From Ranitomeya imitator (taxonomy: Eukaryota), in assembly GCF_032444005.1 (NCBI RefSeq), contig NC_091289.1, positions 9,114,001-9,178,000 of the forward strand: a DNA stretch of 64,000 nt. Reading direction: 5' to 3'. Positions within the stretch are counted from its first letter, which is position 1. The number at the start of each line of letters is the position of its first letter. This document shows, piece after piece, positions 22,542-54,005 of the stretch. Both the position numbers and the translations under genes were made by a program. Below the pieces are notes generated by a model. It searched no databases. It was given only the letters and a program-made list of their open reading frames with translations, and was not told where the DNA came from.

Positions 22542-23560
22542 TTAGTCTTAGGAGGTATGTAATGGCTCCTGCAGAGCGTGTCACCCAGGGCCTGCGACTT
22601 TCGCCATGTGATGGAAGGGTAAGGTGTTCATTGTTTATGTAAGTCTCTGTCAGTTAGTAAAACGGGCCAATGTTTTCTAAAAATTTGATTTATTTTGGCC
22701 CAGTTTGAATTAAATTTTGTGATAAATCTTGGACCAGTGTCTGCAGTTGTGGTCTTTATACGAGGGGGTTTAGACAGAAAATTAGATCTGCTCTGTTGTG
22801 AAGCACGAAGGTAACCCCTCGTTATTTCTCTGGCTGGATATCCTCTGTTCTTAAATCTACGCTCTAGATTTTTTTGCCTGTCTGTGAAAAGTTGTATCAT
22901 TTGAGCAAATGTGACGAGCTCGCAAGAATTGTCCTATTGGAATGGAATTCTTAAGTTTGGGTGGATGTGAGGATGAATAGTGCAGTAAAGCATTTGTGGC
23001 AGTAGTTTTTCTGTAGATATCTGTGCAAAATGTTCAGTTTGTCTGATTTTTCTCTTTATAGGTATATTTTTTAGTAAAATGTAAATTGCTTATATATTCT
23101 ATAAACTTCTGACAACATCTCTCCGTAGTTCCAAGCAATACATTTTAGATTTTTTTTTAGGCAAAGAAAAATGGTCAAAATTAAAAAAAAAAAAAAACAA
23201 CTCGTTGCTTTCACACCTCAAATAATGCAAAGAAAACAAGTTTATAATCATTTAGAAACAACAATACTAATGTTTTATCTCATGAAGTTCAGAAATCAAT
23301 ATTTGGTGGAATAACCATGATTTTTAATCCCGGCTTTCCTGCGTCTTGGCAGCTTTCCTCCAGTCTGTCACTCTGCTCCTTGGTGACCTGATGCCGCTCC
23401 TGGTACAATAATGTCAGCCGTTCTTCTTTGTTTGATGGCTTGTGACTATCCATCATCCTCTTGATTACATTCCAGATGTTTTCAATGGGGGTCAGGTCTG
23501 GAGAATGGGCGGCCATGACAGGGATGTGATGTGGTGGTCTTTTAATTTTTGCCAGAGCTG

Positions 23561-25720
23561 TATGTAGTATAATGCACAGCCCATAGTCCTCCATGTCGTA
23601 TAATGCACAGCCCATAGTCCTCCATGTAGTATAATGCACAGCCCATAGTCCTCCATATAGTATAATGCACAGACCATAGTCCTCCATGTAGTATAATGCA
23701 CAGCCCATAGTCCTCCATGTAGCATAATGCACAGCCCATAGTCCTCCATGTAGTATAATGCACAGCCCATAGTCCTCCATGTAGTATAATGAACAGCCCA
23801 TAGTCCTCCATGTAGTATAATGAACAGCCCATAGTCCTCCATGTAGTATAATGAACAGCCCATAGTCCTCCATGTAGTATAATGCACAGCCCATAGTCCT
23901 CCATGTAGTATAATGCACAGCCCATAGTCCTCCATGTAGTATAATCCACAGCCCATAGTCCTCCATGTAGTATAATGCACAGCCCATAGTCCTCCATGTA
24001 GTATAATGCACAGCTCATAGTCCTCCATGTAGTATAATGCACAGCCCATAGTCCTCCATGTAGTATAATGCACAGCCCATAGTCCTCCATGTAGTATAAT
24101 GCACAGCCCATAGTCCTCCATGTAGTATAATGCACAGACCATAGTCCTCCATGTAGTATAATGCACAGCCCATAGTCCTCCATGTAGTATAATGCACAGC
24201 CCATAGTCATCCATGTAGTATAATGCACAGCCCATAGTCCTCCATGTAGTATAATGCACAGCCCATAGTCCTCCATGTAGTATAATCCACAGCCCATAGT
24301 CCTCCATGTAGTATAATCCACAGCCCATAGTCATCCATGTAGTATAATGCACAGCCCATAGTCATCCATGTAGTATAATGAACAGCCCATAGTCCTCCAT
24401 ACAGTGTAATGCACAGCCCATAGTCATCCATGTAGTATAATGCACAGCCCATAGTCCTCCATGTAGTATAATGCACAGCCCATAGTCCTCCATGTAGTAT
24501 AATGCACAGACCATAGTCCTCCATGTAGTATAATGCACAGCCCATAGTCATCCATACAGTGTAATGCACAGCCCATAGTCATCCATGTAGTATAATGCAC
24601 AGCCCATAGTCCTCCATGTAGTATAATGCACAGCCCATAGTCCTCCATGTAGTATAATCCACAGCCCATAGTCCTCCATGTAGTATAATCCACAGCCCAT
24701 AGTCATCCATGTAGTATAATGCACAGCCCATAGTCATCCATGTAGTATAATGAACAGCCCATAGTCCTCCATACAGTGTAATGCACAGCCCATAGTCATC
24801 CATGTAGTATAATGCACAGCCCATAGTCCTCCATGTAGTATAATGCACAGCCCACAGTCCTCCATATAGTATAATGCACAGCCCATAGTCCTCCATGTAG
24901 TATAATGCACAGCCCATAGTCATCCATACAGTGTAATGCACAGCCCATAGTCATCCATGTAGTATAATGCACAGCACATAGTCCTCCATGTAGTATAATG
25001 CACAGCCCACAGTCCTCCATATAGTATAATGCACAGCCCATAGTCCTCCATGTAGTATAATGCACAGCCCATAGTCATCCATACAGTGTAATGCACAGCC
25101 CATAGTCATCCATGTAGTATAATGCACAGTTCATAGTCCTCCATGTAGTATAATGCACAGCCCATAGTCCTCCATGTAGTATAATCCACAGCCCATAGTC
25201 CTCCATGTAGTATAATCCACAGCCCATAGTCATCCATGTAGTATAATGCACAGCCCATAGTCATCCATGTAGTATAATGAACAGCCCATAGTCCTCCATA
25301 CAGTGTAATGCACAGCCCATAGTCATCCATGTAGTATAATGCACAGCCCATAGTCCTCCATGTAGTGTAATGCACAGCCCATAGTCATCCATGTAGTATA
25401 ATGCACAGCCCATAGTCCTCCATGTAGTATAATGCACAGCCCATAGTCCTCCATGTAGTATAATGCACAGCCCATAGTCCTCCATGTAGTATAATGCACA
25501 GCCCACAGTCCTCCATATAGTATAATGCACAGCCCATAGTCCTCCATGTAGTATAATGCACAGCCCATAGTCCTCCATGTAGTATAATGCACAGCCCATA
25601 GTCCTCCATGTAGTATAATGCACAGCCCACAGTCCTCCATATAGTATAATGCACAGCCCATAGTCCTCCATGTAGTATAATGCACAGCCCATAGTCCTCC
25701 ATACAGTGTAATGCACCATG
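23561..25720. repeat. 31-bp minisatellite, right arm (CCCATAGTCCTCCATGTAGTATAATGCACAG)
   Basis: About 70 units starting right after the Tc1 right TIR. Confidence 0.97.
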
Positions 25721-25778
25721 ATCAGTGTGATTTTCTCTTGTGCCCACAAACCACTAATATTCCACATTTTCTCTCCAG

Positions 25779-26530: not shown

Positions 26531-26696
26531 CTGATCCCGTCAATTAACCCTCTCACTGCCGCTATCTCAGCTAATGGAGGCTTTGTGCAGGGAGCCATGA
26601 TCACAGGCCGTAATGCTCGCTCATGGTTTTATCGGAGGGGGAGACACATTTCCATTTCTTGAGATAACAGGCCGTAATCATTACCTATTTTTGCAG

Positions 26697-27467
26697 GTAG
26701 CAGAAAAGGATCCTTCTATCGGAAGTGACTTCTCTGACGTAGAAGATGTGGGGCCACTGGCCAGATTTTCTCAGGATGACGATTTCCCGCCTTGCTGTTC
26801 TATAAATGATGACACTCTCCAGTTTGAAAGTCTCTGGGAGCGTTACACTGAGCCGATCACCCCCGTCTACAGACCCCCCGCAGAACGTGGCACCTGGCGC
26901 CAGAAAGAGCAAGACAGCAGCTACGCGTCCGAACCTTCCCTGCTGGACAGCAGTCGCCTCAGCATGTCCAGCGACAACGTCAGCCCCATAGTAAGGAGCC
27001 ACAAGCGATACGAGTCTTCTGACGACGCCTGGACCCCTGGTCGCACCACCAAGTCCGGCAGACGCACTCTGGAAATTCCTTCTACGAGTTCGGACTCCAA
27101 GTTCCTGCCTGGAGGCTTCATAGACACCCACTGCCACCTGGACATGCTCTACTCCAGACTGGCGCACAGGTCGTCCTTCGCGGACCTCCGGGAACAGTTC
27201 ACCTCCACCTTCCCCCGGGAGTTTCAGGGCTGCATCACCGACTACTGCGATCCTCGCACGCTGCACAGGCTTCCATGGGATCAGGTGCTGAACGAGGACT
27301 TGGTGTGGGGGGCTTTTGGCTGTCACCCCCACTTCGCTCAGTATTACGATAAGTACCTGCATGAAGAGATGATGATGGCTCTGCGGCACCCGAAAGCTAT
27401 CGCCTTCGGAGAAATGGGTCTGGACTATTCCCATAAATGTTCCACGGAGATCGCAGACCAGATCATG
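26697..27467 (+). CDS. TATDN2: TATDN2 large exon; start of the TatD domain (FIDTHCHLD, FGCHPH, GEMGLDY)
   Basis: ttgcag acceptor and gtgagg donor. 771 nt. Conserved KDPSIGSDFSDVED and TatD metal-binding motifs. Confidence 0.96.
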
Positions 27468-27938
27468 GTGAGGAATTACTTTCTGTAGACTCTTTTTTTT
27501 TTTTTTAATTATTATTCTGCTGTAACCTGTGTAGCCCCCCACCCAACCCCCATCCCGCTTCTTCCTGATCTGTGCTTGCTGTCATTTCGTAGTTACACAG
27601 AGGCACATGGCTCCAATAATTGGACTGTAAGGGGCGCCGGCGTCCATCACATGATCGGGATAGATCCTGTATATAGTGGGATCAGACTACGGCATTTGTA
27701 GCCTGTTACCATGGAAACAGGTCTTTGTGATCTGCCCCGATCAGTGATATGAGGCCCCCATGTATTATACAATATTTAAGGTTTCTAGTAAATACCAGTA
27801 AGCAGAATTCTTAAAAATCATGAAAAATTTGGTGGTGTGTTTGCTACGGGTTACAGCACGTCTGCGGGGGATTTAGTTCTTGTTGCACTTTATTATCAGG
27901 TTTACTAACAACATTCCTCTGTTTTTCCACCCGAGCAG

Positions 27939-30340: not shown

Positions 30341-30752
30341 ATAAATATGGAGTATAAATACTGGGCCCTATAAGGGGGACACAGTGTGAGAGGACAGTGT
30401 GAAGAGGGGACTGGTATAGAAAGGAGAGGACAGTGTGAAGAGCATGTACCATAAGAGGGACAGTGTGGGGGTCATACTTTGTGCAGACAATATAGTGAGG
30501 GGCAATTTTTTATTTGGGAGCATTATAATGACACTTGTATCTTTAAGGGTGTCATGTGGAGACTTTCTGCAAAAGAGCGGCGAAGATGGAAGTCTGCAGA
30601 GACGGCTGTGGATGAGAAAACTCATCATGGGATCTGGACAAGATGAAGAAAAGGAGAACGGCTCCAGAGGCGACGTCATCTATCAGGTACCTGGATGTAA
30701 ATGTTATTTGTGATGCTAACTCTCATGTTTTTATATATGTTAGGAGATTTAA

Positions 30753-31088
30753 AGGGACACTGTCACCTGAATTTGGAGGGAACAATTTTCAGCCATAGGG
30801 GTGGGGTTTTCGGGTGTTTGATTCACCCTTTCCATACCCGCTGGCTGCATGCTGGCTGCAATATTGGATTGAAGCTCATTCTCTGTCCTCCGTAGTACAT
30901 ACTGTACCTGCACAATCTGCAATCTTGCCTTGCGCAGGCGTGTACTATGGAGGACAGAGAATGAGCTTCAATCCAATATTGCAGCCAGCATGCAGCCAAT
31001 GGGTAAGGAAAGGGTGAATCAAACACCCGAAAGCCCCGCCCCTATGGCTGAAAATTGTTCCCTCCAAATTCAGGTGACAGAGTCCCTT
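30753..31088. mobile_element. TTAA-flanked fold-back MITE (T2-like), same family as 35483-35799
   Basis: ttaa|agggacactgtcacctgaatttgg ... ccaaattcaggtgacagagtccct. Near-perfect palindrome. Confidence 0.9.
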
Positions 31089-31687: not shown

Positions 31688-33050
31688 TTATGGTCCTGTG
31701 ACATCGAGCTTCTCTTCTGCTTCTCTTAGTTTTTCACTGAACATTGAGAGCATTAGGGAGAGGAGCTCGTGGGCACATGACTGAGTGTGCAAATCACATA
31801 TGTCCTTGGCGGAGGGGGGGCACCAAAATGAATTCTTTCCCCGGGTGCCAGAAACCCTAGATACACCTCTGCCGGTATGCTACTGCGAGCGGTGATTACC
31901 GGGTGCGGTGGAGGGAGGTCTGTGCACAGGCAGTGAGGCAGGGACTGAGGGTGTGCACAGAGAGGATGGAGACCCGGAGACTGCCCGTCCCAGTCTACGC
32001 CGTAGCCTAGAGCCCTCATTATCATAGGAATATGGCAGTTAATAAATTGCTTTTCTGAAGCTTTATAGTGTAGTTTTAGGTCAGGGAGGGTTGGATAGGG
32101 ATGAGCTAGCAAGGTGCAGGGACAGGTAATGATGGCTACTTGCGAACATGTGCGGCAATTGCGGTTTTGCACTTACGATGATACATAAAACACTGCTAGT
32201 AGTGTTTTTTCTCATTGCTGCAAGTACCGCATTTGCCGGATGGCGGCAAAACCGCAAGAGCCGCACATGTCTGTAAGTCCCATAGGGAATGAATGAGGCC
32301 GAATGCAGTGTTGCCCTAAGTGATCCATTACGCGGCAGATGCGGAAAAACTGTCGGATCTGCTGCAAAAGGCGACTTTCACATCAGCGATTTTTGCCAAA
32401 GTCACTGCCGATAGTGTCATACTCACCAAAGGGGGAGGCAGCACTAAAAGTGCCTAGGGCAGCAGAAACTCTAAATACGGCCCTGCTGGGAGGGGAGAGG
32501 AGGGAGATGTAGCTGCAGGTCCTTTTTATGATTAGGTATGCTGGGAGGGGAGAGGAGGGAGATGTAGCTGCAGGTCCTTTTTATGATTAGGTATGCTGGG
32601 AGGGGAGAGGAGGGAGATGTAGCTGCAGGTCCTTGCTATGATCAGGTTTGCTGGGAGGTTAGCAGAGGGGGATGGTGCTGCAGCTTCCCCTGATTCTGCA
32701 CTCTCGGATCTGGAGGAGGGAGTTATTGGACTGGCGTATAACACTCAGCTCTGACATCGCACTAGGAAGGATTTGTCCATTCAGCCAACATAGAGAAAAT
32801 ATCCAACAACCTGTGATCTGCAGATGCCACACACGATTTTTGGCGGCTCCAGCTCCTGTTTTTTTGCCAGAGCTGTGAATTGTGTCCTGATAAATGGCTG
32901 GGTCGTGACAGTCAGAAATAACCACAAGACGGATAAACTGCTTGTAAACATCTATTTTATTTAATGGAAAGGTTCGTGCAATGATTGACAGGATGGGGTC
33001 CTGCGGCGGTGGGCACGGGGTCCTGCGGTGGTGGGCATGGGGTGTGGTGG

Positions 33051-33070
33051 CTAGTCCTCCTCCTGGGGAT
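33051..33070 (-). CDS. GHRL: Preproghrelin last coding exon (D-PQEED*)
   Basis: Strong acceptor tttcttctatttgtctcaccag. The phase-1 join gives Asp. Stop TAG. AATAAA on the minus strand at 32956-32961. Confidence 0.8.
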
Positions 33071-33904
33071 CTGGTGAGACAAATAGAAGAAACTCTTAGG
33101 AATCACCGTACATGCGGGTGCGGGATAAGTTTATATATATATATATATATATTGTTACGCGACACATTATAGCTGATAACGCTCGGCTTTAGTGTTAGTT
33201 TTTTCATTATCAGACTTTTTATTAAAGGGAACTCTTCTCTTCCTCCGTCATGGCGTGCTACTGGCATCTATTATATCCAAATCATTGGGGTCTGTCCTGC
33301 ACCAGCAATATATAGGGGGAGAAGTCTGGTATAACGGTGCCTGCAGCATCTTACAGGAGGCCAACGATTATACTTGAGACTCCTAAAGGGGCATTCCAGT
33401 GTTTGGATGAGAAACCCATTGTAGTATATGTGTAATTGCCTTTTTGGTCGCACATTTGCCCCCTATATATTTTGCCTTTTGAATTCGGTCGCAGTCTACA
33501 ATTTCCATGATGCACTACTGACATTAATTCTAAGCTGAGCTCCTCCTACTGCAGTCTCCGCCCTCTTGTGCATTTCATATTGTGCTCCTCCACTACGGAG
33601 CCGCTCACAATAGTTCCCCTCCTATAAACGCCTAATGTCTGAGCGGCAAATTGATGCTGAACTGCAGGTGGTCACTCGGCTGAGCGGTGAGGTTTATAAC
33701 GTTGCATCACATGGTTTCAATAAGGGTCACATTTTATAAACTGGAACATCCCTTTAACCGCGGGATCAGAATGGACGATTGCTCATAGTTTAGTGATCAG
33801 AGATATAAACCCCATGTGCCGCTCTGCTGCTGGAGGGAGAGCCGCTGTTTGCAGCAGTCCTTCACTTTGTCTAGTGGTTTTGGCAGCTCCAGATGAGGGG
33901 CCCC

Positions 33905-35190
33905 TCACTCCGCCATTGTCCCCTCACTCTGCCATTGTCTCCTCACTCCGCCATTGTCTCCTCACTTCTCCATTGTCCCCTCACTCCGCCAGTCTCCTCA
34001 CTCCGCCATTGTCTCCTCACTCCGCCATTGTCTCCTCACTCCGCCATTGTCCCCTCACTTCTCCATTGTCTCCTCACTCCGCCATTGTCCCCTCACTCCG
34101 CCATTGTCCCCTCACTCCGCCATTGTCCCCTCACTCCGCCATTGTCCCCTCACTTCTCCATTGTCTCCTCACTCTGCCATTGTCCCCTCACTCCGCCATT
34201 GTCCCCTCACTCCGCCATTGTCCCCTCACTCCGCCATTGTCCCCTCACTTCTCCATTGTCTCCTCACTCTGCCATTGTCTCCTCACTCCGCCATTGTCCC
34301 CTCACTCCGCCATTGTCCCCTCACTCCGCCATTGTCCCCTCACTTCTCCATTGTCTCCTCACTCTGCCATTGTCTCCTCACTCCGCCATTGTCCCCTCAC
34401 TCCGCCATTGTCCCCTCACTCCGCCATTGTCCCCTCACTTCTCCATTGTCTCCTCACTCTGCCATTGTCTCCTCACTCCGCCATTGTCCCCTCACTCCGC
34501 CATTGTCCCCTCACTCCGCCATTGTCCCCTCACTTCGCCATTGTCTCCTCACTCTGCCATTGTCTCCTCACTCCGCCATTGTCCCCTCACTCCGCCATTG
34601 TCCCCTCACTCCGCCATTGTCCCCTCACTTCTCCATTGTCTCCTCACTCTGCCATTGTCCCCTCACTCTGCCATTGTCTCCTCACTCTGCCATTGTCTCC
34701 TCACTCTGCCATTGTCTCCTCACTCTGCCATTGTCCCCTCACTTCTCCATTGTCCCCACTCCGCCATTGTCTCCTCACTCCGCCATTGTCTCCTCACTCT
34801 GCCATTGTCCCCTCACTTCTCCATTGTCTCCTCACTCTGCCATTGTCCCCTCACTTCTCCATTGTCTCCTCTGCCATTGTCTCCTCACTCCGCCATTGTC
34901 TCCTCACTCTGCCATTGTCTCCTCACTTCTCCATTGTCTCCTCACTCCGCCATTGTCCCCTCACTCTGCCATTGTCCCCTCACCCTGCCATTGTCCCCTC
35001 ACCCTGCCATTGTACCCTCACCCTGCCATTGTCTCCTCACTTCTCCATTGTCTCCTCACTCTGCCATTGTCCCCTCACTCCGCCATTATCCCCTCACTTC
35101 TCCATTGTCTCCTCACTCTGCCATTGTCCCCTCACTCCGCCATTGTCCCCTCACTTCTCCATTGTCTCCTCATTCCTCCCCTCACTCCGC
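33905..35190. repeat. 19-bp pyrimidine-rich minisatellite in the last GHRL intron (CCATTGTCCCCTCACTCCG)
   Basis: About 67 units. Source of the spurious 422-486 aa ORFs. Confidence 0.97.
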
Positions 35191-35351: not shown

Positions 35352-35463
35352 CTTCAGGGGAGCCGAGGGCGAGCAGTCCGAGCAGGAGGTTTTCTATGGC
35401 CGCTTTCTGCCTCCAGATCTGCTCCTGAGTCACCATCATGTTAACACCCAGAGGGATCGTCAC
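35352..35463 (-). CDS. GHRL: Preproghrelin exon, C-peptide/obestatin-homologous region (VTIPLGVNMMVTQEQIWRQKAAIENLLLGLLALGSPE)
   Basis: ttctctattccag acceptor and g|gtacag donor. 112 nt. Resembles the frog proghrelin C-terminal region as I recall it (TQEQ..KQRAA). Confidence 0.88.
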
Positions 35464-35482: not shown

Positions 35483-35799
35483 AGGGAACCTGTCACCTGA
35501 ATTTGGCGGGACCGGTTTTCGGTCATATGGGCGGAGTTTTCAGGTGTTTGATTCACCCTTTCCTTACCCGCTGGCTGCAATATTGGATTGAAGTTCATTC
35601 TCTGTCCTCCGTAGTACACGCCTGCGCAAGGCAATTTTTCCTTGCGCAGGCGTGTACTACGGAGGACATAGAATGAACTTCAATCCAATATTGCGGCCAG
35701 CATGCAGCCAGCGGGTAAGGAAAGGGTGAATCAAACACCCGAAAACTCCGCCCATATGACCGAAAACCGGTCCCGCCAAATTCAGGTGACAGGTTCACT
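35483..35799. mobile_element. TTAA-flanked fold-back MITE (T2-like), 317 bp
   Basis: TTAA at 35479-35482 and 35800-35803. TIRs agggaacctgtcacctgaatttggcggg / cccgccaaattcaggtgacaggttcact. Confidence 0.93.
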
Positions 35800-35824
35800 T
35801 TAAGGTAAGACGAGGGCACGGCTC

Positions 35825-36075
35825 CAGCGGGGCCCAGACCCAACGGGAACACAGATCCAGCGGGGCCCAGACCCAACGGGAACACAGATCCAGCGGGGCC
35901 CAGACCCAACGGGAACACAGATCCAGCGGGGCCCAGACCCAACGGGAACACAGATCCAGCGGGGCCCAGACCCAACGGGAACACAGATCCAGCGGGGCCC
36001 AGACCCAACGGGAACACAGATCCAGCGGGGGCCCAGACCCAACGGGAACACAGATCCAGCGGGGGCACAGACCCA
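35825..36075. repeat. 33-bp minisatellite, about 7 near-identical units
   Basis: Repeated cagcggggcccagacccaacgggaacacagatc. Confidence 0.95.
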
Positions 36076-36133
36076 GTGGGTGCACAATTCAGGCAGCTGA
36101 ACCCCACGTTTCAGCACCCCACAATATACACAC

Positions 36134-36244
36134 CCCAATCTCTTCCTGAACCTCAGAAAGTTCGTCTGTGACATCCCCCACGGAGTCTCCGGCCTCCCTG
36201 CGGCCCATATTATTGTACTGCAGCTTTTTTGGTATTTTCTTGCC
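36134..36244 (-). CDS. GHRL: Preproghrelin exon; C-terminal half of mature ghrelin and processing site (GKKIPKKLQYNNMGRREAGDSVGDVTDELSEVQEEIG)
   Basis: ttttttccag acceptor and gtgtgt donor. 111 nt, phase 0/0. NM..RR and EEIG resemble bullfrog proghrelin. Confidence 0.9.
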
Positions 36245-36653
36245 CTGGAAAAAACTTAGAGGTAAAAAAAATCTATATACTTAATTCATTACAAAACTCC
36301 CAGAGCTGCGCTCACAATTCTGCTCACGTCACCTATCTTGGGTCTATGCTGTGAGCTGCTATAATGCACTGAAGGCAGCCTGCAGACGCCGAACCAGCAG
36401 GATCCATCAGTATGATGTACTTGCCTCAAATCTAAGGAGAAAATAGCAGAACTGTGAATGCAGCTCTGGATGCGACTAGTGTATGACATATGGTCAAATT
36501 ACAGCTATTTTTGCAGTTTTTCCCCAAGTTGTAGCTTTCTAGATATGGCAAAACTTCATCACTCTGCATGACCGGACGGCAACAGTAAAAGGATGCTGGG
36601 AGTTGCAGTTTTGCCAGAATGCTGCAGTTTGGTGATCGCTGCTCTCCACTTAC

Positions 36654-36767
36654 CGCGTTTTTCTGCATATCTGCCGGACTTAGGAAGCTCGATCCGCCCT
36701 CCACATCCTCCGTCCACAGGAGACAAAACAGGACGACGGCGCAGAGCGAAGCTTTACCCAACATCAT
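36654..36767 (-). CDS. GHRL: Preproghrelin first coding exon; signal peptide plus GSSFLSPADMQKNA
   Basis: ATG at 36767 (second ATG at 36764). Hydrophobic 24-aa signal peptide. Diagnostic GSSFLSP. gtaagt donor. Confidence 0.97.
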
Positions 36768-36893
36768 CGCTGGAGATCTGCAAAATGGGAAAAAATCCGT
36801 TACATTGAGTCCACAGCGAAAATGGTCAATACCTGGAGATGTGACGTACAAGAAGCTTCACGGGAAAGTCTTCACACCCTGAAGTCCGCGGCA

Positions 36894-36901
36894 TATTTAT
36901 A
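36894..36901 (-). promoter_or_regulatory. GHRL: Probable GHRL TATA box (TATAAATA)
   Basis: Minus-strand TATAAATA about 130 nt upstream of the ATG, followed by a candidate short non-coding exon (about 36868-36833). Confidence 0.65.
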
Positions 36902-37149
36902 GGAAAGGCCGAAGAAAAATGGAGGCGACTGAACCCACACAACGAGGGAATGACGAGAGCCGCCATTGTGACCGCAGCCGCTGTGCTGACCCCGGGGACC
37001 TGAGACTGATAGCGCAGGAGGGAGCAGGAAGAATTTCTATTATTGCTCTGATGTCGTGTTTGTCTGCGGATATTTCCATCTATATCAGAACGGAAAAGTC
37101 AGAGACGGCGAGAACAAATATGTGTCACCGAGGAACGCAGTCATGTACC

Positions 37150-40110
37150 CGAGGATCAGCAACAATGTCATCTATGTAGTGAGTGCAGCTCTGGAGGATA
37201 ATACAGGATGTAACTCAGGATCAGTAATGTATGTACACAGTGACTGCACCAGGAGAATAGTGAGTGCAGCTCTGGAGTATAATACAGGAGGTAACTCAGG
37301 ATCAGTAATGTAATGTATGTACACAGTGACTACACCAGCAGAATAGTGAGTGCAGCTCTGGAGTATAATACATGATGTAACTCAGCATCAGTAATGTAAT
37401 GTATGTACACAGTGACTGCGCCAGCAGAATAGTGAGTGCAGCTCTGGAGTATAATACAGGAGGTAACTCAGGATCAGTAATGTAATGTATGTACACAGTG
37501 ACTGCGCCAGCAGAATAGTGAGTGCAGCTCTGGGGTATAATACAGGAGGTAACTCAGGATCAGTAATGTAATGTATGTACACAGTGACTGCGCCAGCAGA
37601 ATATTGAGTGCAGCTCTGGGGTATAATACAGGATGTAACTCAGGATCAGTAATGTAATGTATATACACAGTGACTGCACCAGCACAATAGTGAGTGCAGC
37701 TCTGGAGTATAATACAGGAGATAACTCAGGATCAGTAATGTAATGTATGTACACAGTGACTGCACCAGCAGAATAGTGAGTGCAGCTCTGGGGTATAATA
37801 CAGGATGTAACTCAGGATCAGTAATGTAATGTATATACACAGTGACTGCACCAGCACAATAGTGAGTGCAGCTCTGGAGTATAATACAGGAGATAACTCA
37901 GGATCAGTAATGTAATGTATGTACACAGTGACTGCACCAGCAGAATAGTGAGTGCAGCTCTGGAGTATAATACAGGATGTAACTCAGGATCAGTAATGTA
38001 ATGTATGTACACAGTGACTGCACCAGCAGAATAGTGAGTGCAGCTCTGGGGTATAATACAAGATGTAACCCAGGATAAGTAATGTATGTACACAGTGACT
38101 GCACCAGCAGAATAGTGAATGCAGCTCTGGGATAGAATACGGGATGTAACTCAGGATCAGTAATGTAATGTATGTACACAGTGACTGCACCAGCAGAATA
38201 GTGAGTGCAGCTCTGGAGTATAATACAGGATGTAACTCAGGATCAGTAATGTATGTACACAGTGACTGCACCAGCAGAATAATGAGTGCAGCTCTGGAGT
38301 ATAATACAGGATGTAACTCAGGATCAGTAGTGTAATGTATGTACACAGTGACTGCACCAGCAGAACAGTGAGTGCAGCTCTGGAGTATAATACAGGATAA
38401 AACCCAGGATCCGTAATGTAATGTATGTACACAGTGACTGCACCAGCAGAATAGTGAGTGCAGCTCTGGAGTATAATACAGGATGTAACTCAGGATCAGT
38501 AATGTAATGTATGCACACAGTGACTGCACCAGCAGAATAGTGAGTGCAGCTCTGGAGTATAATACAGGATGTAACTCAGGATCAGTAATGTAATGTATGT
38601 ACACAGTGACTGCACCAGCAGAATAGTGAGTGCAGCTCTGGAGTATAACACAGGATGTAACTCAGGATCAGTAATGTAATGTACGTACACAGTGACTGCA
38701 CCAGCAGAATAGTGAGTGCAGCTCTGGGGTATAATACAGGATGTAACTCAGGATCAGTAATGTAATGTATGTACACAGTGACTGCACCAGCAGAATAGTG
38801 AGTGCAGCTCTGGGGTATAATACAGGATGTAACTCAGGATCAGTAATGTAATGTATGTACACAGTGACTGCACCAGCAGAATAGTGAGTGCAGCTCTGGA
38901 GTATAACACAGGATGTAACTCAGGATCAGTAATGTAATGTATGTACACAGTGACTGCACCAGCAGAATAGTGAGTGCAGCTCTGGGGTATAATACAAGAT
39001 GTAACCCAGGATAAGTAATGTATGTACACAGTGACTGCACCAGCAGAATAGTGAATGCAGCTCTGGGATAGAATACGGGATGTAACTCAGGATCAGTAAT
39101 GTAATGTATGTACACAGTGACTGCACCAGCAGAATAGTGAGTGCAGCTCTGGAGTATAATACAGGATGTAACTCAGGATCAGTAATGTAATGTATGTACA
39201 CAGTGACTCCACCAGCAGAATAGTGAGTGCAGCTCTGGGGTATAATACAGGATGTAACTCAGGATCAGTAATGTAATGTATGTACACAGTGACTGCACCA
39301 GCAGAATAGTGAGTGCAGCTCTGGAGTAAAATGCAGGAGGTAACTCAGGATCAGTAATGTGATGTATGTGCACAGTGACTGCACCAGCAGAATACTGAGT
39401 GCAGCTCTGGGGTATAATACAGGATGTAACTCAGGATCAGTAATGTAATGTATGCACACAGTGACTGCACCAGCAAAATAGTGAGTGCAGCTCTGGAGTA
39501 TAACACAGGATGTAACTCAGGATCAGTAATGTATGTACACAGTGACTGCACCAGCAGAATAATGAGTGCAGCTCTGGAGTATAATACAGGATGTAACTCA
39601 GGATCAGTAGTGTAATGTATGTACACAGTGACTGCACCAGCAGAACAGTGAGTGCAGCTCTGGAGTATAATACAGGATAAAACCCAGGATCCGTAATGTA
39701 ATGTATGTACACAGTGACTGCACCAGCAGAATAGTGAGTGCAGCTCTGGAGTATAACACAGGATGTAACTCAGGATCAGTAATGTAATGTACGTACACAG
39801 TGACTGCACCAGCAGAATAGTGAGTGCAGCTCTGGGGTATAATACAGGATGTAACTCAGGATCAGTAATGTAATGTATGTACACAGTGACTGCACCAGCA
39901 GAATAGTGAGTGCAGCTCTGGAGTATAACACAGGATGTAACTCAGGATCAGTAATGTAATGTATGTACACAGTGACTGCACCAGCAGAATAGTGAGTGCA
40001 GCTCTGGAGTATAATACAGGATGTAACTCAGGATCAGTAATGTAATGTATGTACACAGTGACTGCACCAGCAGAATAGTGAGTGCAGCTCTGGGGTATAA
40101 TGCAGGAGAT
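37150..40110 (+). repeat. 86-bp satellite array, about 34 units, between the GHRL promoter and the SEC13 3' end
   Basis: Tandem GTATAATACAGGATGTAACTCAGGATCAGTAATGTAATGTATGTACACAGTGACTGCACCAGCAGAATAGTGAGTGCAGCTCTGGA, with 81-bp deletion variants. Confidence 0.98.
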
Positions 40111-48996: not shown

Positions 48997-50240
48997 GCAG
49001 CCCCATGTAAAAATGCTGTATCACCCACAACCCCGTGTAAGAACATTGTATAACCCACAGCCCCATGAAAGAATGTTCTATCGCCCACAGCCCCATGTAA
49101 GAACATTGTATAACACACAGCCCCATGTAAGAACATTGTATAACACACAGCCCCATGTAAGAACATTGTATAACACACAGCCCCATGTAACAACATTGTA
49201 TAACACACAGCCCCATGTAAGAATGTTATATCACCCGCAGCCCCATGTAAGAACATTGTATAACCCACAGCCCCATGTAAGAATGCTGTAACACCCACAA
49301 CCCCATGTAAATGTTCTATCACCCGCAGCCCCATGTAAGAACATTGTATAACCCACATCCCCATGTAAGAATGCTGCATCACCCACAGCCCCATGCAACA
49401 ATGTTATATCACCCGCAGCCCCATGTAAGAACATTGTATAACACACAGCCCCATGTAAGAACATTGTATAACACACAGCCCCATGTAAGAACATTGTATA
49501 ACACACAGCCCCATGTAAGAACATTGTATAACACACAGCCCCATGTAACAACATTGTATAACACACAGCCCCATGTAACAACATTGTATAACACACAGCC
49601 CCATGTAACAACATTGTATAACCCACAGCCCCATGTAACAACATTGTATAACACACAGCCCCATGTAACAACATTGTATAACCCACAGCCCCATGTAACA
49701 ACATTGTATAACACACAGCCCCATGTAAGAATGTTATATCACCCGCAGCCCCATGTAAGAATGTTATATCACCCGCAGCCCCATGTAAGAACGTTGTATC
49801 ACCAGCCTCCCCATGTCACAATGTTCTATCACCCACAGCCCCATGTAAGAACATTGTATAACCCACAGCCCCATGTAATAACGTTGTAGCACCCGCAGCC
49901 CCATGTCACAATGTTCTATCACCCGCAGCCCCATGTAAGAACATTGTATAACCCAGAGCCCCATGTAAGAATGCTGTATCACCCACAGCCCCATGTAATT
50001 GTTCTATCACCCACAGCCCCATGTAACAATGTTCTATCACCCACAGCCCCATGTAAGAACGTTGTATCACCAGCCTCCCCATGTCACAATGTTCTATCAC
50101 CCACAGCCCCATGTAAGAACATTGTATAACCCACAGCCCCATGTAAGAACGTTGTAGCACCCGCAGCCCCATGGCACAATGTTCTATCAACCGCAGCCCC
50201 ATGTCACAATGTTCTATCAACCGCAGCCCCATGTAACAAT
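48997..50240. repeat. 30-bp minisatellite, right arm (CAGCCCCATGTAAGAACATTGTATAACACA)
   Basis: About 41 units, related to the 45885-46205 array. Confidence 0.95.
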
Positions 50241-50559
50241 GTTGTCTCTAATGCAGTCTAAAGATTATATTTCATCTTACAGACAGCACTATGAAAATGA
50301 CTCCTCCCTTGTAGAAAAAATGTATGGCAATCTGCAGTCCTATGTAAACATGTTGTATATACCCCGCAGTCCTAAGTACATTTATCTTGCCTGCACTTTT
50401 ATGTAAATACTGTTATTTGCAGTTCCATGTAAACGTCATACGTTATCCGCAGTCCTATGTAAATGTCAGATGCTGCCCTAAATCCTACGTAAGAATGTAA
50501 CGTCACCTACAGTCCTATGTAAGTATAACACCCTGCCCGCAGTCCTATGCAACAGCAGA

Positions 50560-50850
50560 ACTCGGCTGTGGCCCTGTCCCTCCGGGAGCCGTGGCCCTGT
50601 CCCTCCGGGAGCCCCGGCCTGTCCCTCCCGCCCCCTGCGGCCGCCCGGAGTGTGCACCGCGGGGATGATACGCACCATGGTGCCGCTCCCGGCCGCTGTG
50701 CTCGCCGCCTCTTCGGTGTCTGTCAGACGTGGCAACTCCCGGCGCCTCCAGCAGCACGAAGCACTTCCGGTTCCGGCAGGGCAGAGCGACTTCCGGTCCG
50801 GATAGGGGAAGTTTCCCAAGTACAAAGGTTCCGCGCACAGCTGTGGATGC
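50560..50850 (-). promoter_or_regulatory. SEC13: SEC13 CpG-island promoter and 5' UTR with tandem ETS-type CCGGAAGT sites
   Basis: acttccgg at 50763 and 50789. CpG-dense. Confidence 0.75.
50676..50678 (-). CDS. SEC13: SEC13 exon 1 coding part (ATG only)
   Basis: gcggcacc ATG|gtgcgt: Kozak context directly followed by a donor, inside a CpG island. Joins in frame to VSVIN. Confidence 0.9.
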
Positions 50851-50904
50851 AGAGTCCTGTGTGCACCGTATAATGCGTCCCCAATGCAGTCACCAACAGA
50901 TCAA

Positions 50905-53900
50905 GGGACAGAGGACACCGGGCAGGGGACAGGAGACGGGACAAGGGACAGGAGACACAGGACAAGAGACAGAGTACAAGGGACACAGGACAAGTGACAG
51001 GGGACACAGTACAGGAGACAGAGGAAACAGGACAGGAGACAGGACAGAGGACACAGGGCAGGGGACAGGAGACAGAGGACAGGGGACACAGGACAAGTGA
51101 CAGGACGGGATACAGGACGGGGCAAAGGACAGGAGACAGAGGACAGGGGACACAGGACAAGTGACAGGGGACACAGTACAGGAGACAGAGGAAACAGGAC
51201 AGGGGACAGAAGAGGGGACACAGGACAGGAGACAGGACAGGGGACACAGGACAGGAGACAGAGGAAACAGGACAGGGGACACAGGGCAGGGGACAAGACA
51301 CAGGACAGGGCACACAGGATAGGAGACGGGACACAGGGCAGGGGACAAGAGACGGGACAAGGGACAGGAGACACAGGACAAGAGACGGGACACAGGACAA
51401 GTGACAGGGGACACAGTACAGGAGACAGAGGAAACAGGACAGGGGACACAGGACAGGAGACAGGACAGAGGACACAGGGCAGGGGACAGGAGACAGAGGA
51501 CAGGGGACACAGGACAGGTGACAGGACGGGATACAGGACAGGGGGCAAAGGACAGAGGACAGGGGACACAGGACAAGTGACAGGGGACACAGTACAGGAG
51601 ACAGAGGAAACAGGACAGGGGACATAGGGCAGGAGACAGAAGACGGGACAGGGGACACAGGGCAGGAGACGGGACACAGGACAGGAGACAGGACAGGGGA
51701 CACAGGACAGGAGACAGAGGAAACAGGACAGGGGACACAGGGCAGGAGACAAGACACAGGACAGGGCACACAGGACAGGAGACGGGACACAGGGCAGGGG
51801 ACAAGAGACGGGACAAGGGACAGGAGACACAGGACAAGAGACGGGACACAGGACAAGTGACAGGGGACACAGTACAGGAGACAGAGGAAACAGGACAGGG
51901 GACACAGGACAGGAGACAGGACAGAGGACACAGGGCAGGGGACAGGAGACAGAGGACAGGAGACGGGACACAGGACAGGAGACAGGGGACACAGGAGAAG
52001 TGACAGGGCAGGAGACAGAAGACACAGGACAGGGCACACAGGGCAGGGGACAAGAGACATAGGACAGGAGACGGGACACAGGACAAGTGACAGGGCAGGG
52101 GGCACAGGACAGGAGACAGAGGACAGGGGACACAGGACAAGTGACAGGACAGGAGACAGAGGAAACAGGACAGGGGACACAGGACAGGAGACAGAGAAAA
52201 CAGGACAGGGGACACATGGCAGGAGACAGAAGACGGGACAGGGGACACAGGGCAGGAGACGGGACACAGGACAGGAGACAGATGACAGGGGACACAGGAC
52301 AGGAGACAGGACAGGGGACACAGGACATGAGACAGAGGAAACAGGACAGGGGACACAGGGCAGGAGACAGAAGACACAGGACAGGGCACACAGGACAAGG
52401 GACAGGAGACGGGACACAGGACAAGTGGCAGGGGACACAGGACAGGAGACGGGACACAGGACAAGTGGCAGGGGACACAGGACAGGAGACAGGACAGGGG
52501 GCACAGGACAGAGGACAGGGGACACAGGACAAGTGACAGGGGACACAGGACAGGAGACAGAGGAAACAGGACAGGGGACACAGGACAGGAGACAGATGAC
52601 AGGGAACACAGGACAGGAGACAGAGGACACAGGACAAGTGACAGAGGACAGGGAGGCAGGAAACAGGACAGGGGACAAAAGGCGGGACACAGGGCAGGAG
52701 ACAGAGGACACAGGACAAGTGACAGGGGACACCGGACAGGAGACAGAGGAAACAGGACAGGGGACACAGGACAGGAGACGGGACAAGGGACAGTAGACAC
52801 AGGACAGGAGACAGGACAAGTGACGGGACACAGGACAAGTGACAGAGGACAGGGGACACAGGACAGGAGACAGGGGAAACAGGACAGGGGAAACAGGAGA
52901 CAGAGGAAACAGGACAGGGAACCCAGGGCAGAAGACGGGACAGGGGACACAGGACAGGAGGCAAGGGACAGAGGACACAGGGCAGGGGACAGGAGACAGG
53001 ACAGGGGACACAGGACAGGAGGCAGATGACAGGGGACACAGGACAATTGACAGGGGACACAGGACAGGAGACAGAGAAAACAGGACAGGGGGCACAGGGC
53101 AGGGGACAGGAGACGGGACAGAGGACAGGAGACAGAGGGCAGGAGACGGGACACAGGACAGGAGACAGAGGACAGGGGACACAGGACAAGTGACAGGACA
53201 CAGGGCAGGAGACAGAGGAAACCGGACAGGGGACACAGGGTAGGAGACAAGGGACAGAGGACACAGGGCAGGGGACAGGAGACGGGATAGGGGACACAGG
53301 GCAGAGGACATAGGTCACAGGACAGGAGACAGAGGACAAGGGACAGGAGACGGGACACGTCAGGGGACACAGGACAAATGACTGGACACAGGGCAGGGGA
53401 CACAGGACAAATGACGGGACATGTGACAGAGGACAGGACAAAGGACACAGGGCAGGGGATAGAGGTCACAGGACAAGTGACAGAGGACAGGAGACAAGGG
53501 ACAGAGGACACAGGGCAGGGGACACAGTACAGGAGACAGATGACAAGGGACAGGGGACACAGGACAGGAGACAGAGAAAACAGGACAGGGGACACAGGGC
53601 AGGGGACAGGAGACAGGACAAGTGACAGGGGACACAGGACAGAGGACAGGGGACACAGGACAAGTGACAGGACAGGAGACAGAGGAAACCGGACAGGGGA
53701 CACAGGGTAGGAGACAAGGGACAGAGGACACAGGGCAGGGGACAGGAGACGGGATAGGGGACACAGGGCAGAGGACATAGGTCACAGGACAGGAGACGGG
53801 ACAAGTGACGGGACACGTCAGGGGACACAGGACAAATGACTGGATACAGGGCAGGAGACGGGACACAGGGCAGGGAACACAGGACAAATGACAGGGGACA

Positions 53901-54005
53901 TGTGACAGAGGACAGGACACAGGGCAGGGGACAGAGGTCACAGAACAAGTGACAGAGGACAGGAGACACAGGACAGGGGACAGAGGTCAGAGGACACAGG
54001 ACAGG
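50905..54005. repeat. 3.1-kb purine-rich low-complexity satellite (GACAGG/GGACAC/GACAG units) with higher-order duplications
   Basis: The + strand is nearly devoid of T. Source of the spurious 846-962 aa Cys/Pro ORFs. Confidence 0.95.

What the first reader, a model, noticed from the sequence alone, without database searches (positions are those of the whole stretch)
36134..36767. Frog ghrelin with mammal-identical GSSFLSP and a Gly-Arg-Arg amidation signal
Seen: splicing gives signal peptide + GSSFLSPADMQKNAGKKIPKKLQYNNM-G-R-R. Known: bullfrog ghrelin starts GLTFLSP, is acylated on Thr3 and is not amidated; many teleost ghrelins end in GRR and are amidated; human ghrelin starts GSSFLSP with octanoyl-Ser3. 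Inference: cleavage at RR, carboxypeptidase trimming and PAM would give a 27-residue, Ser3-acylated, C-amidated peptide (..NNM-NH2). I do not recall this combination for a tetrapod ghrelin. Two internal KK pairs could also yield shorter forms.
Basis: partly seen in the sequence, partly recalled or inferred. Interest (0 to 1): 0.75.

Follow-up and report, generated by a model that had tools for sequence, protein, structure and literature searches.

The report
Poison-frog ghrelin gene with amidation signal
This is the real, expressed gene for the hunger hormone ghrelin in a poison-dart-type frog; one residue change, shared by the whole poison-frog group, creates the Gly-Arg-Arg signal that in bony fish gives an amidated hormone, which has not been reported for a land vertebrate and has not been tested chemically.

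Summary
On the minus strand, exon 36767-36654 encodes a 24-residue signal peptide plus ghrelin residues 1-14 (GSSFLSP...). Exon 36244-36134 encodes residues 15-27, then Gly (36205-36203) and Arg-Arg. Spliced contigs from four public runs, in four studies, join exactly 36654 to 36244 and 36134 to 35463. None of them changes a letter in the Gly-Arg-Arg exon, so this is not an assembly error.

GSSFLSP is not a mammal-like oddity. It is the ancestral vertebrate core and is present in most frogs. The bullfrog's GLTFLSP is the derived, ranoid-only state.

The Gly before Arg-Arg is rare. Among about 135 tetrapod preproghrelins I found it only in dendrobatoid frogs (Dendrobates tinctorius, with an identical mature peptide; Phyllobates terribilis; two Anomaloglossus proteins; and this window) and in Eleutherodactylus coqui. 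So it belongs to a clade and is already present in public predicted proteins, not unique to this genome. I found no paper that describes it.

A 27-residue, Ser3-acylated peptide ending in Met-amide is a reasonable prediction but is not shown. In flounder, the same kind of signal gives mostly non-amidated forms. Overall this is a modestly interesting new variant of a well-known hormone.

The parts
36894..36901 (-). TATAAATA, a candidate TATA box upstream of the gene
   Evidence: Read directly from the sequence. Its function is inferred, and the reads do not show a transcription start.
36833..36870 (-). Putative short non-coding first exon (donor ccag|gtattg at 36832). Its 5' end is approximate.
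   Evidence: Based on the sequence only and on analogy with the non-coding first exon of mammalian GHRL. The reads do not confirm it. One contig ends at 36776, while others run unspliced through this region.
36654..36777 (-). First coding exon. ATG at 36767-36765, signal peptide 36767-36696, ghrelin Gly1 at 36695-36693, acylation-site Ser3 at 36689-36687, and ghrelin residues 1-14 up to 36654.
   Evidence: Translation. phmmer E = 2.3e-15 to P. terribilis ghrelin-like protein. tblastn gives 94.6% identity to D. tinctorius. The 3' end is fixed by spliced contigs.
36245..36653 (-). Intron of 409 bases (gt...ag) that splits the mature peptide between residues 14 and 15
   Evidence: The joint 'skips 409' is present in contigs of X1, X5, X8 and X11.
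36134..36244 (-). Second coding exon. It holds ghrelin residues 15-27, Gly28 (36205-36203), Arg-Arg (36202-36197) and the start of the C-peptide.
   Evidence: Translation. Contigs of four runs cover it with no other letters. Loose ends at its 3' edge carry the start of the next exon.
35352..35463 (-). Third coding exon (the region that corresponds to obestatin / C-ghrelin). It ends in phase 1 at AAG|gtacag.
   Evidence: Translation. tblastn gives 86% identity to D. tinctorius. The loose-end sequences of X1, X5 and X11 match its first bases. The 3' donor is inferred.
32935..33070 (-). Last exon. It encodes the last six residues (..DPQEED), with the stop at 33053-33051, a 3' UTR and AATAAA at 32961-32956.
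   Evidence: Sequence reading. The C-terminus resembles those of Phyllobates and Anomaloglossus. Reads do not confirm it, and the 3' end is approximate.
26613..27485 (+). Large exon of the neighbouring gene TATDN2, convergent with GHRL. It serves as a synteny marker.
   Evidence: Pfam TatD_DNase, E = 2.7e-14. A TatD gene sits in the same position and orientation next to the ghrelin gene in D. tinctorius and P. terribilis. SEC13-GHRL-TATDN2 synteny is described in PMC4797157.

Best explanation
This is the single-copy preproghrelin gene (GHRL) of a dendrobatid (poison) frog that is related to, but distinct from, Dendrobates tinctorius. The 118-residue precursor would be processed in five steps. 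(1) The signal peptide is removed before Gly1. (2) Ser3 is O-acylated by GOAT, which recognises the conserved GSSF core. (3) A prohormone convertase cuts after Arg29-Arg30. (4) Carboxypeptidase E removes the two Arg, leaving a Gly28-extended peptide. (5) PAM converts Gly28 into an amide on Met27. In the frog groups nearest to the poison frogs the residue before Arg-Arg is Asn; it is His in the early-branching frogs. In the common ancestor of Dendrobatidae and Aromobatidae it became Gly, which created the amidation signal. It has been kept in every dendrobatoid sequence available. The splice, the encoded sequence, its expression and its distribution across the clade are shown here. Steps 1 to 5 are inferred from the motifs and from what is known of bullfrog and teleost ghrelin. 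I expect a mixture of the 27-residue amide with Gly-extended or trimmed forms, not a pure amide.
For: Exon translations. The exact GT..AG joints 36654|36244 and 36134|35463 occur in contigs of four runs from four studies, with no variant in the Gly-Arg-Arg exon. phmmer and profile hits to annotated frog ghrelins run from E = 2e-15 to 1e-58. The mature peptide plus GRR is identical in D. tinctorius P0013, and GRR is also present in P. terribilis P0001 and Anomaloglossus P0014 and P0015. In a tree of 33 amphibian precursors the dendrobatoid clade has SH-aLRT support of 100. TATDN2 synteny holds (PMC4797157). Bullfrog ghrelin, which ends just before the homologous Arg-Arg (P0032..NMN|RR), was purified as 27- and 28-residue peptides; this rests on my recollection of Kaiya 2001, cited in PMC12009760. 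Teleost ghrelins with Gly plus basic residues have been isolated as amides (PMC3760443; PMC2803784). X-Gly-Arg-Arg is the textbook signal for PC, CPE and PAM processing, and Met-Gly is a favourable PAM substrate (established knowledge).
Against: There is no peptide chemistry for any dendrobatoid frog. In barfin flounder the cDNA predicts an amide, yet the most abundant isolated form was a shorter non-amidated peptide, and Gly-extended forms were also present (PMC3760443). Catfish has both Gly-extended and amide forms (PMC3713435). The position before Arg-Arg varies across tetrapods (H, N, Q, S, V, G), so Gly could be a neutral substitution. Its conservation within the clade is no stronger than that of the rest of the mature peptide. 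Two internal Lys-Lys pairs could give shorter forms, one of them preceded by Gly (Ala14-Gly15-Lys-Lys). The tissue of origin of the RNA runs is unknown because the run ids are coded.
Confidence: 0.6

Rival explanations
1. The gene and sequence are the same, but the Gly is a functionally neutral substitution at a variable position. The circulating hormone would be mainly the Gly-extended 28-mer or a trimmed free acid, with little or no amide and no physiological consequence.
For: The residue before Arg-Arg differs between tetrapod groups (H, N, Q, S, V, G). Flounder, and reportedly goldfish, yield mostly non-amidated forms despite carrying the signal (PMC3760443). From established knowledge, the N-terminal acylated core is enough to activate the receptor, so selection on the C-terminus may be weak.
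Against: Gly is invariant in all five dendrobatoid sequences plus the window, while the residue just before it varies (M, L, N). Going from Asn to Gly needs two base changes. PAM acts on essentially all secretory-granule peptides with a C-terminal Gly, and enteroendocrine cells express it (established knowledge).
Confidence: 0.3
2. The main products are shorter peptides cut at the internal Lys-Lys pairs. One example is a 14-residue peptide amidated through Gly15 (Ala-Gly-Lys-Lys). In that case the C-terminal Gly-Arg-Arg would matter little.
For: The sequence has Gly15-Lys16-Lys17 and Lys20-Lys21. The Gly-Lys-Lys motif is shared by most non-ranoid neobatrachian frogs.
Against: Convertases rarely use Lys-Lys sites, and Pro follows closely after each pair here. 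Mammalian and bird ghrelins carry similar internal basic pairs and are isolated full length (established knowledge). No short frog ghrelin has been reported in the papers I could read.
Confidence: 0.07
3. The Gly codon or the splice is an assembly or annotation artefact.
For: None was found.
Against: Four runs from four studies carry the spliced form with identical letters. Three other dendrobatoid genomes encode the same Gly-Arg-Arg.
Confidence: 0.02

Closest known systems
Predicted preproghrelin of Dendrobates tinctorius (P0013, NCBI 'appetite-regulating hormone'), with those of Phyllobates terribilis (P0001) and Anomaloglossus baeobatrachus (P0014, P0015)
   Same: They are orthologues. The 27-residue peptide plus Gly-Arg-Arg is identical in D. 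tinctorius, and Gly-Arg-Arg is present in all of them. The neighbouring gene (TATDN2) and the exon layout are the same.
   Different: The window differs from D. tinctorius by 5-14% per exon, so it comes from another species. The public models are automatic predictions: one has a spurious N-terminal extension and another reads through the last donor. I found no paper that comments on the amidation signal.
Bullfrog ghrelin (Aquarana catesbeiana, P0032; purified peptide of Kaiya et al. 2001)
   Same: It is an orthologous gene with the same length up to the Arg-Arg site (28 residues) and the same FLSPADMQK stretch. By my recollection of that paper it was isolated as 27- and 28-residue acylated peptides.
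   Different: The bullfrog has Leu2-Thr3 (acylated on Thr), a different middle part (ERQSQNKLRHG) and Asn before Arg-Arg, so it has no amidation signal.
Teleost amidated ghrelins (eel, trout, tilapia, flounder, sea bass P0043)
   Same: They share the GSSFLSP core and a Gly followed by basic residues directly after the mature peptide. Amide forms have been isolated (PMC3760443).
   Different: The fish peptides are shorter (about 19-23 residues), end in Val, Ile or Ala, and share no similarity with this one beyond the core. The Gly arose independently here, by a substitution within frogs.
Human and other mammalian ghrelin
   Same: The GSSFLSP core with Ser3 is identical, the gene has four coding exons, and it lies next to TATDN2.
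   Different: From established knowledge, mammals cut at a single Arg (Pro-Arg), have no Gly there, and the peptide is not amidated. The shared core is ancestral, not convergent.

Membership tests
Ghrelin / preproghrelin (GHRL, motilin-ghrelin family) | N-terminal active core G-S/T-S/T-F-L-S-P directly after a signal peptide, with a hydroxyl residue at position 3 for acylation | tested here: met
   The translation gives ..VEG|GSSFLSP, with Ser3 at 36689-36687. The same core is present in about 135 tetrapod ghrelins.
Ghrelin / preproghrelin (GHRL, motilin-ghrelin family) | Significant sequence similarity to known ghrelin precursors along the whole precursor | tested here: met
   I tested exon by exon. 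Exon 1 gave phmmer E = 2.3e-15. tblastn of D. tinctorius, Bufo and bullfrog precursors hits all three main coding exons in order. The relatives link to Xenopus, bullfrog, caecilian, salamander and bird ghrelins by profile search.
Ghrelin / preproghrelin (GHRL, motilin-ghrelin family) | Match to Pfam Motilin_ghrelin (PF04644) or Motilin_assoc (PF04643) | tested here: inconclusive
   Single exons gave no hit. The models also miss the purified bullfrog precursor and score below the cut-off on the D. tinctorius and Bufo precursors, so they are insensitive for frogs.
Ghrelin / preproghrelin (GHRL, motilin-ghrelin family) | Conserved genomic position next to TATDN2 | tested here: met
   A TatD_DNase exon lies at 26613-27485 on the + strand, convergent with GHRL. 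D. tinctorius and P. terribilis have the same arrangement. The synteny is described in PMC4797157. I did not look for SEC13 on the other side.
Ghrelin / preproghrelin (GHRL, motilin-ghrelin family) | Expression as a spliced mRNA | tested here: met
   Spliced contigs occur in four runs of four studies. The tissue is not known.
Ghrelin / preproghrelin (GHRL, motilin-ghrelin family) | O-acylation of residue 3 and activation of GHS-R1a | not testable with these tools
   This needs peptide chemistry and a receptor assay.
C-terminally amidated ghrelins (so far a teleost feature) | Gly immediately before the basic cleavage site that ends the mature peptide | tested here: met
   Gly28-Arg29-Arg30 are encoded at 36205-36197 and confirmed in RNA contigs.
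C-terminally amidated ghrelins (so far a teleost feature) | An amide at the C-terminus of the isolated peptide | not testable with these tools
   This needs mass spectrometry. The flounder precedent shows that the signal alone does not tell which form is most abundant (PMC3760443).

The most novel reading that the evidence does not exclude
Poison frogs and their relatives (Dendrobatoidea), and independently or jointly Eleutherodactylus, make a C-terminally amidated, Ser3-acylated ghrelin. This would be the first amidated ghrelin in a tetrapod. It would have arisen by one residue change, converged on the teleost state, and been kept since the group's common ancestor because it alters the hormone's stability or signalling.
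Probability: 0.4. Interest if true: 0.5.

Novelty: new variant of a known kind. Interest (0 to 1): 0.38.

Why it matters
Ghrelin is one of the most thoroughly compared peptide hormones, and C-terminal amidation has been treated as a hallmark of the teleost peptide alone. A tetrapod clade with a conserved amidation signal would be a natural experiment: the same hormone, with close relatives (Bufo, Leptodactylus) that lack the Gly. It could show whether amidation changes half-life, potency at the receptor or processing. It also corrects a common picture taken from the bullfrog. Most frogs keep the ancestral GSSFLSP core, and the Thr3-acylated GLTFLSP form is a ranoid peculiarity. The practical weight is modest, because the acylated N-terminus carries receptor activation and the effect of a C-terminal amide may be small.

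Tried and rejected
Pfam on the three exon translations gave nothing. The models also miss bullfrog ghrelin, so I set this result aside as uninformative.

I tried to fetch the DNA of the D. tinctorius, P. terribilis and E. coqui genes to trace the codon path from Asn to Gly and to measure how far the window is from them. No DNA was served, so the codon history is untested.

Papers on dendrobatid or amidated tetrapod ghrelin: none found. PMC3356126 is not held. The key subscription reviews by Kaiya could not be read, so I cannot fully exclude that the feature has been described.

The scan's own notes held nothing more on ghrelin.

An assembly error is rejected. A second ghrelin copy in the window is rejected, because tblastn finds only one.

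All searches used single exons by reference, or natural full-length proteins from the database. The window's own sequence is therefore absent from the tree. I placed it by per-exon identity instead; it is closest to D. tinctorius.

I made no structure prediction, because a short secreted peptide precursor would not gain from one.

Full report
**What is there.** The finding lies on the minus strand.

- From the ATG at 36767 to 36654 the sequence encodes a 24-residue hydrophobic signal peptide ending Val-Glu-Gly, then Gly-Ser-Ser-Phe-Leu-Ser-Pro and seven more residues. A gtaagt donor follows.
- After a ttccag acceptor, 36244-36134 encodes thirteen more residues ending Asn-Asn-Met, then Gly (36205-36203), Arg-Arg (36202-36197) and an acidic C-peptide.
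- A third coding exon (35463-35352) and a short last exon complete a 118-codon precursor. The last exon starts at 33070, has its stop at 33053-33051 and has AATAAA at 32961-32956.
- Upstream there is a TATAAATA at 36901-36894 and a plausible short non-coding exon. This part rests on the sequence alone.

**Is the splice real?** I laid Logan contigs of four public runs, from four different studies, on 36080-37150.

- All four runs hold a contig that skips exactly the 409 bases between 36244 and 36654, with GT..AG ends on the gene's strand.
- In three runs, the contig that ends at the 3' edge of the second coding exon continues with letters matching the first bases of the exon at 35463.
- The contigs over 36134-36244 show no other letters, so the Gly codon is not an assembly slip.
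- Unspliced contigs are present too, at lower depth.
- The runs are coded, so I cannot say from which tissue they come.

**What is it?**

- The first coding exon alone, searched against 1.8 billion representative proteins, finds frog ghrelin precursors and little else. The best hit is Phyllobates terribilis 'ghrelin-like', E = 2.3e-15 and 95% identity.
- tblastn of natural full-length frog precursors against the window hits the three main coding exons in order and finds only one copy.
- A TatD_DNase exon (TATDN2) lies convergent at 26613-27485. This matches the arrangement next to the ghrelin genes of D. tinctorius and P. terribilis and the SEC13-GHRL-TATDN2 synteny described for vertebrates (PMC4797157).
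- Pfam gives no hit on the exons. It also fails on the purified bullfrog precursor, so this says nothing.
- Per-exon identity is highest to Dendrobates tinctorius (95, 88 and 86%) and lower to Phyllobates and Anomaloglossus. The window therefore comes from another dendrobatid species.

**How unusual is it?** Three database searches with natural proteins or their alignments gave 143 proteins. About 135 of them carry the ghrelin core. I tabulated the peptide up to the first Arg-Arg.

The core:
- GSSFLSP is found in coelacanth, caecilians, salamanders, turtles, crocodilians, lizards, birds and most frogs: Ascaphus, pelobatoids, Rhinophrynus, myobatrachoids, hyloids and Hyperolius.
- GLTFLSP occurs only in the ranoid frogs sampled other than Hyperolius (Rana and relatives, Pyxicephalus, Mantella).
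- GTSFLSP occurs in Xenopus and Eleutherodactylus.
- The 'mammal-identical' core is therefore simply the ancestral state.

The residue before Arg-Arg:
- His in Ascaphus, Xenopus, most pelobatoids, Rhinophrynus and most sauropsids.
- Asn in ranoids, myobatrachoids, Bufo, Leptodactylus and most turtles.
- Gln in caecilians and salamanders.
- Ser in Hyla and Rhinoderma.
- Gly only in D. tinctorius, P. terribilis, both Anomaloglossus proteins and Eleutherodactylus coqui, plus the window.

D. tinctorius has exactly the same 27 residues plus Gly-Arg-Arg as the window. On a maximum-likelihood tree of 33 amphibian precursors the four dendrobatoid sequences form a clade with SH-aLRT support of 100. The Gly state needs two changes on that tree, though one change is not excluded because the base of Hyloidea is unresolved. 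NCBI taxonomy places these genera in Dendrobatidae, Aromobatidae and Eleutherodactylidae.

**How it most likely works.** By homology with the bullfrog, the convertase cuts after Arg-Arg. The bullfrog's purified 27- and 28-residue peptides end just before the same site (P0032; Kaiya 2001 as cited in PMC12009760; the peptide lengths are from my memory of that paper). Carboxypeptidase E would then expose Gly28, and PAM would turn it into Met27-amide. GOAT would acylate Ser3. All of these steps are inferred.

There is a precedent for caution. In barfin flounder the cDNA predicts an amidated 20-mer, and that peptide exists, but the most abundant form was a non-amidated 19-mer, with Gly-extended 21-mers also present (PMC3760443). 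Catfish has both Gly and amide forms (PMC3713435). I therefore expect a mixture. There is also a second, internal Gly-Lys-Lys (residues 15-17) shared by many frogs. I consider cleavage there unlikely.

**Novelty.** PMC2803784 states that C-terminal amidation is a specific feature of teleost ghrelin. I found no open paper on dendrobatid ghrelin or on an amidated tetrapod ghrelin. The main subscription reviews could not be read. The sequences themselves are already public as automatic predictions. What is new is the recognition of a clade-wide amidation signal, not a new gene.

**Left out.** DNA of the relatives' genes could not be fetched, so the codon path to Gly is untested.

Noticed in passing
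window 33901-35176, 35823-36075 and 37177-38000: There are three minisatellites in and around the ghrelin gene: a 19-bp unit x 68 in the last intron, a 33-bp unit x 7.6 (99% matches) in the intron after the Gly-Arg-Arg exon, and an 86-bp unit x 9.6 just upstream of the promoter.
   Followed up: no
window 35530-35790 and 30749-31026: A near-perfect palindromic element (a long hairpin, MITE-like) sits in the ghrelin intron. A second copy of the same sequence lies about 5 kb away, where mirrored ORFs translate to the same peptide.
   Followed up: no
window 36131: The only contigs that read on past the 36134 donor into the intron (runs X8 and X11) carry C>G at 36131, which is position +3 of that donor on the gene's strand. 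This could be an allele with a weaker donor and intron retention, or it could just be pre-mRNA of another allele. The retained form would still encode the same ghrelin.
   Followed up: partly
window 36246-36654: Run X11 holds one low-depth contig (depth 4) that joins the two exons two bases off, with five extra letters in between. This would shift the frame and is probably an assembly or splicing error.
   Followed up: no
P0001 (P. terribilis) and P0013 (D. tinctorius), against window 36966-36847 and 35351-35311: Both public gene models look flawed. The 66-residue N-terminal extension of the Phyllobates model maps to the promoter and 5' exon region. The Dendrobates model reads through the third coding exon's donor to a stop, and that read-through frame is letter-for-letter the same at protein level in the window.
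   Followed up: partly
P0014 and P0015 (Anomaloglossus); P0003, P0021, P0037, P0042 (Hyperolius riggenbachi): Anomaloglossus has two clearly different ghrelin-like proteins on different large contigs. Hyperolius has several ghrelin-like models, some lacking the middle exon or the core. These may be lineage-specific duplications or pseudogenes.
   Followed up: no
P0132 (gecko Heteronotia binoei): The usual His-Arg-Arg is His-Gly-Arg in this protein, so a Gly precedes a single Arg. This is another possible but weaker amidation-type site in a tetrapod ghrelin.
   Followed up: no
window 23289-25767: A long tandem array on the minus strand gives stacked ORFs that repeat a motif of about 31 residues (..HYTTWRTMGCALYYMEDYGLCIILHGGLWAV..). 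It lies next to a transposase-like tail within the TATDN2 region.
   Followed up: no
window 50000-54000: This region has strongly skewed composition (AT skew up to 0.87, GC skew 0.38). tblastn noise hits suggest a purine-rich repeat that translates to ..GDTGQETEE...
   Followed up: no
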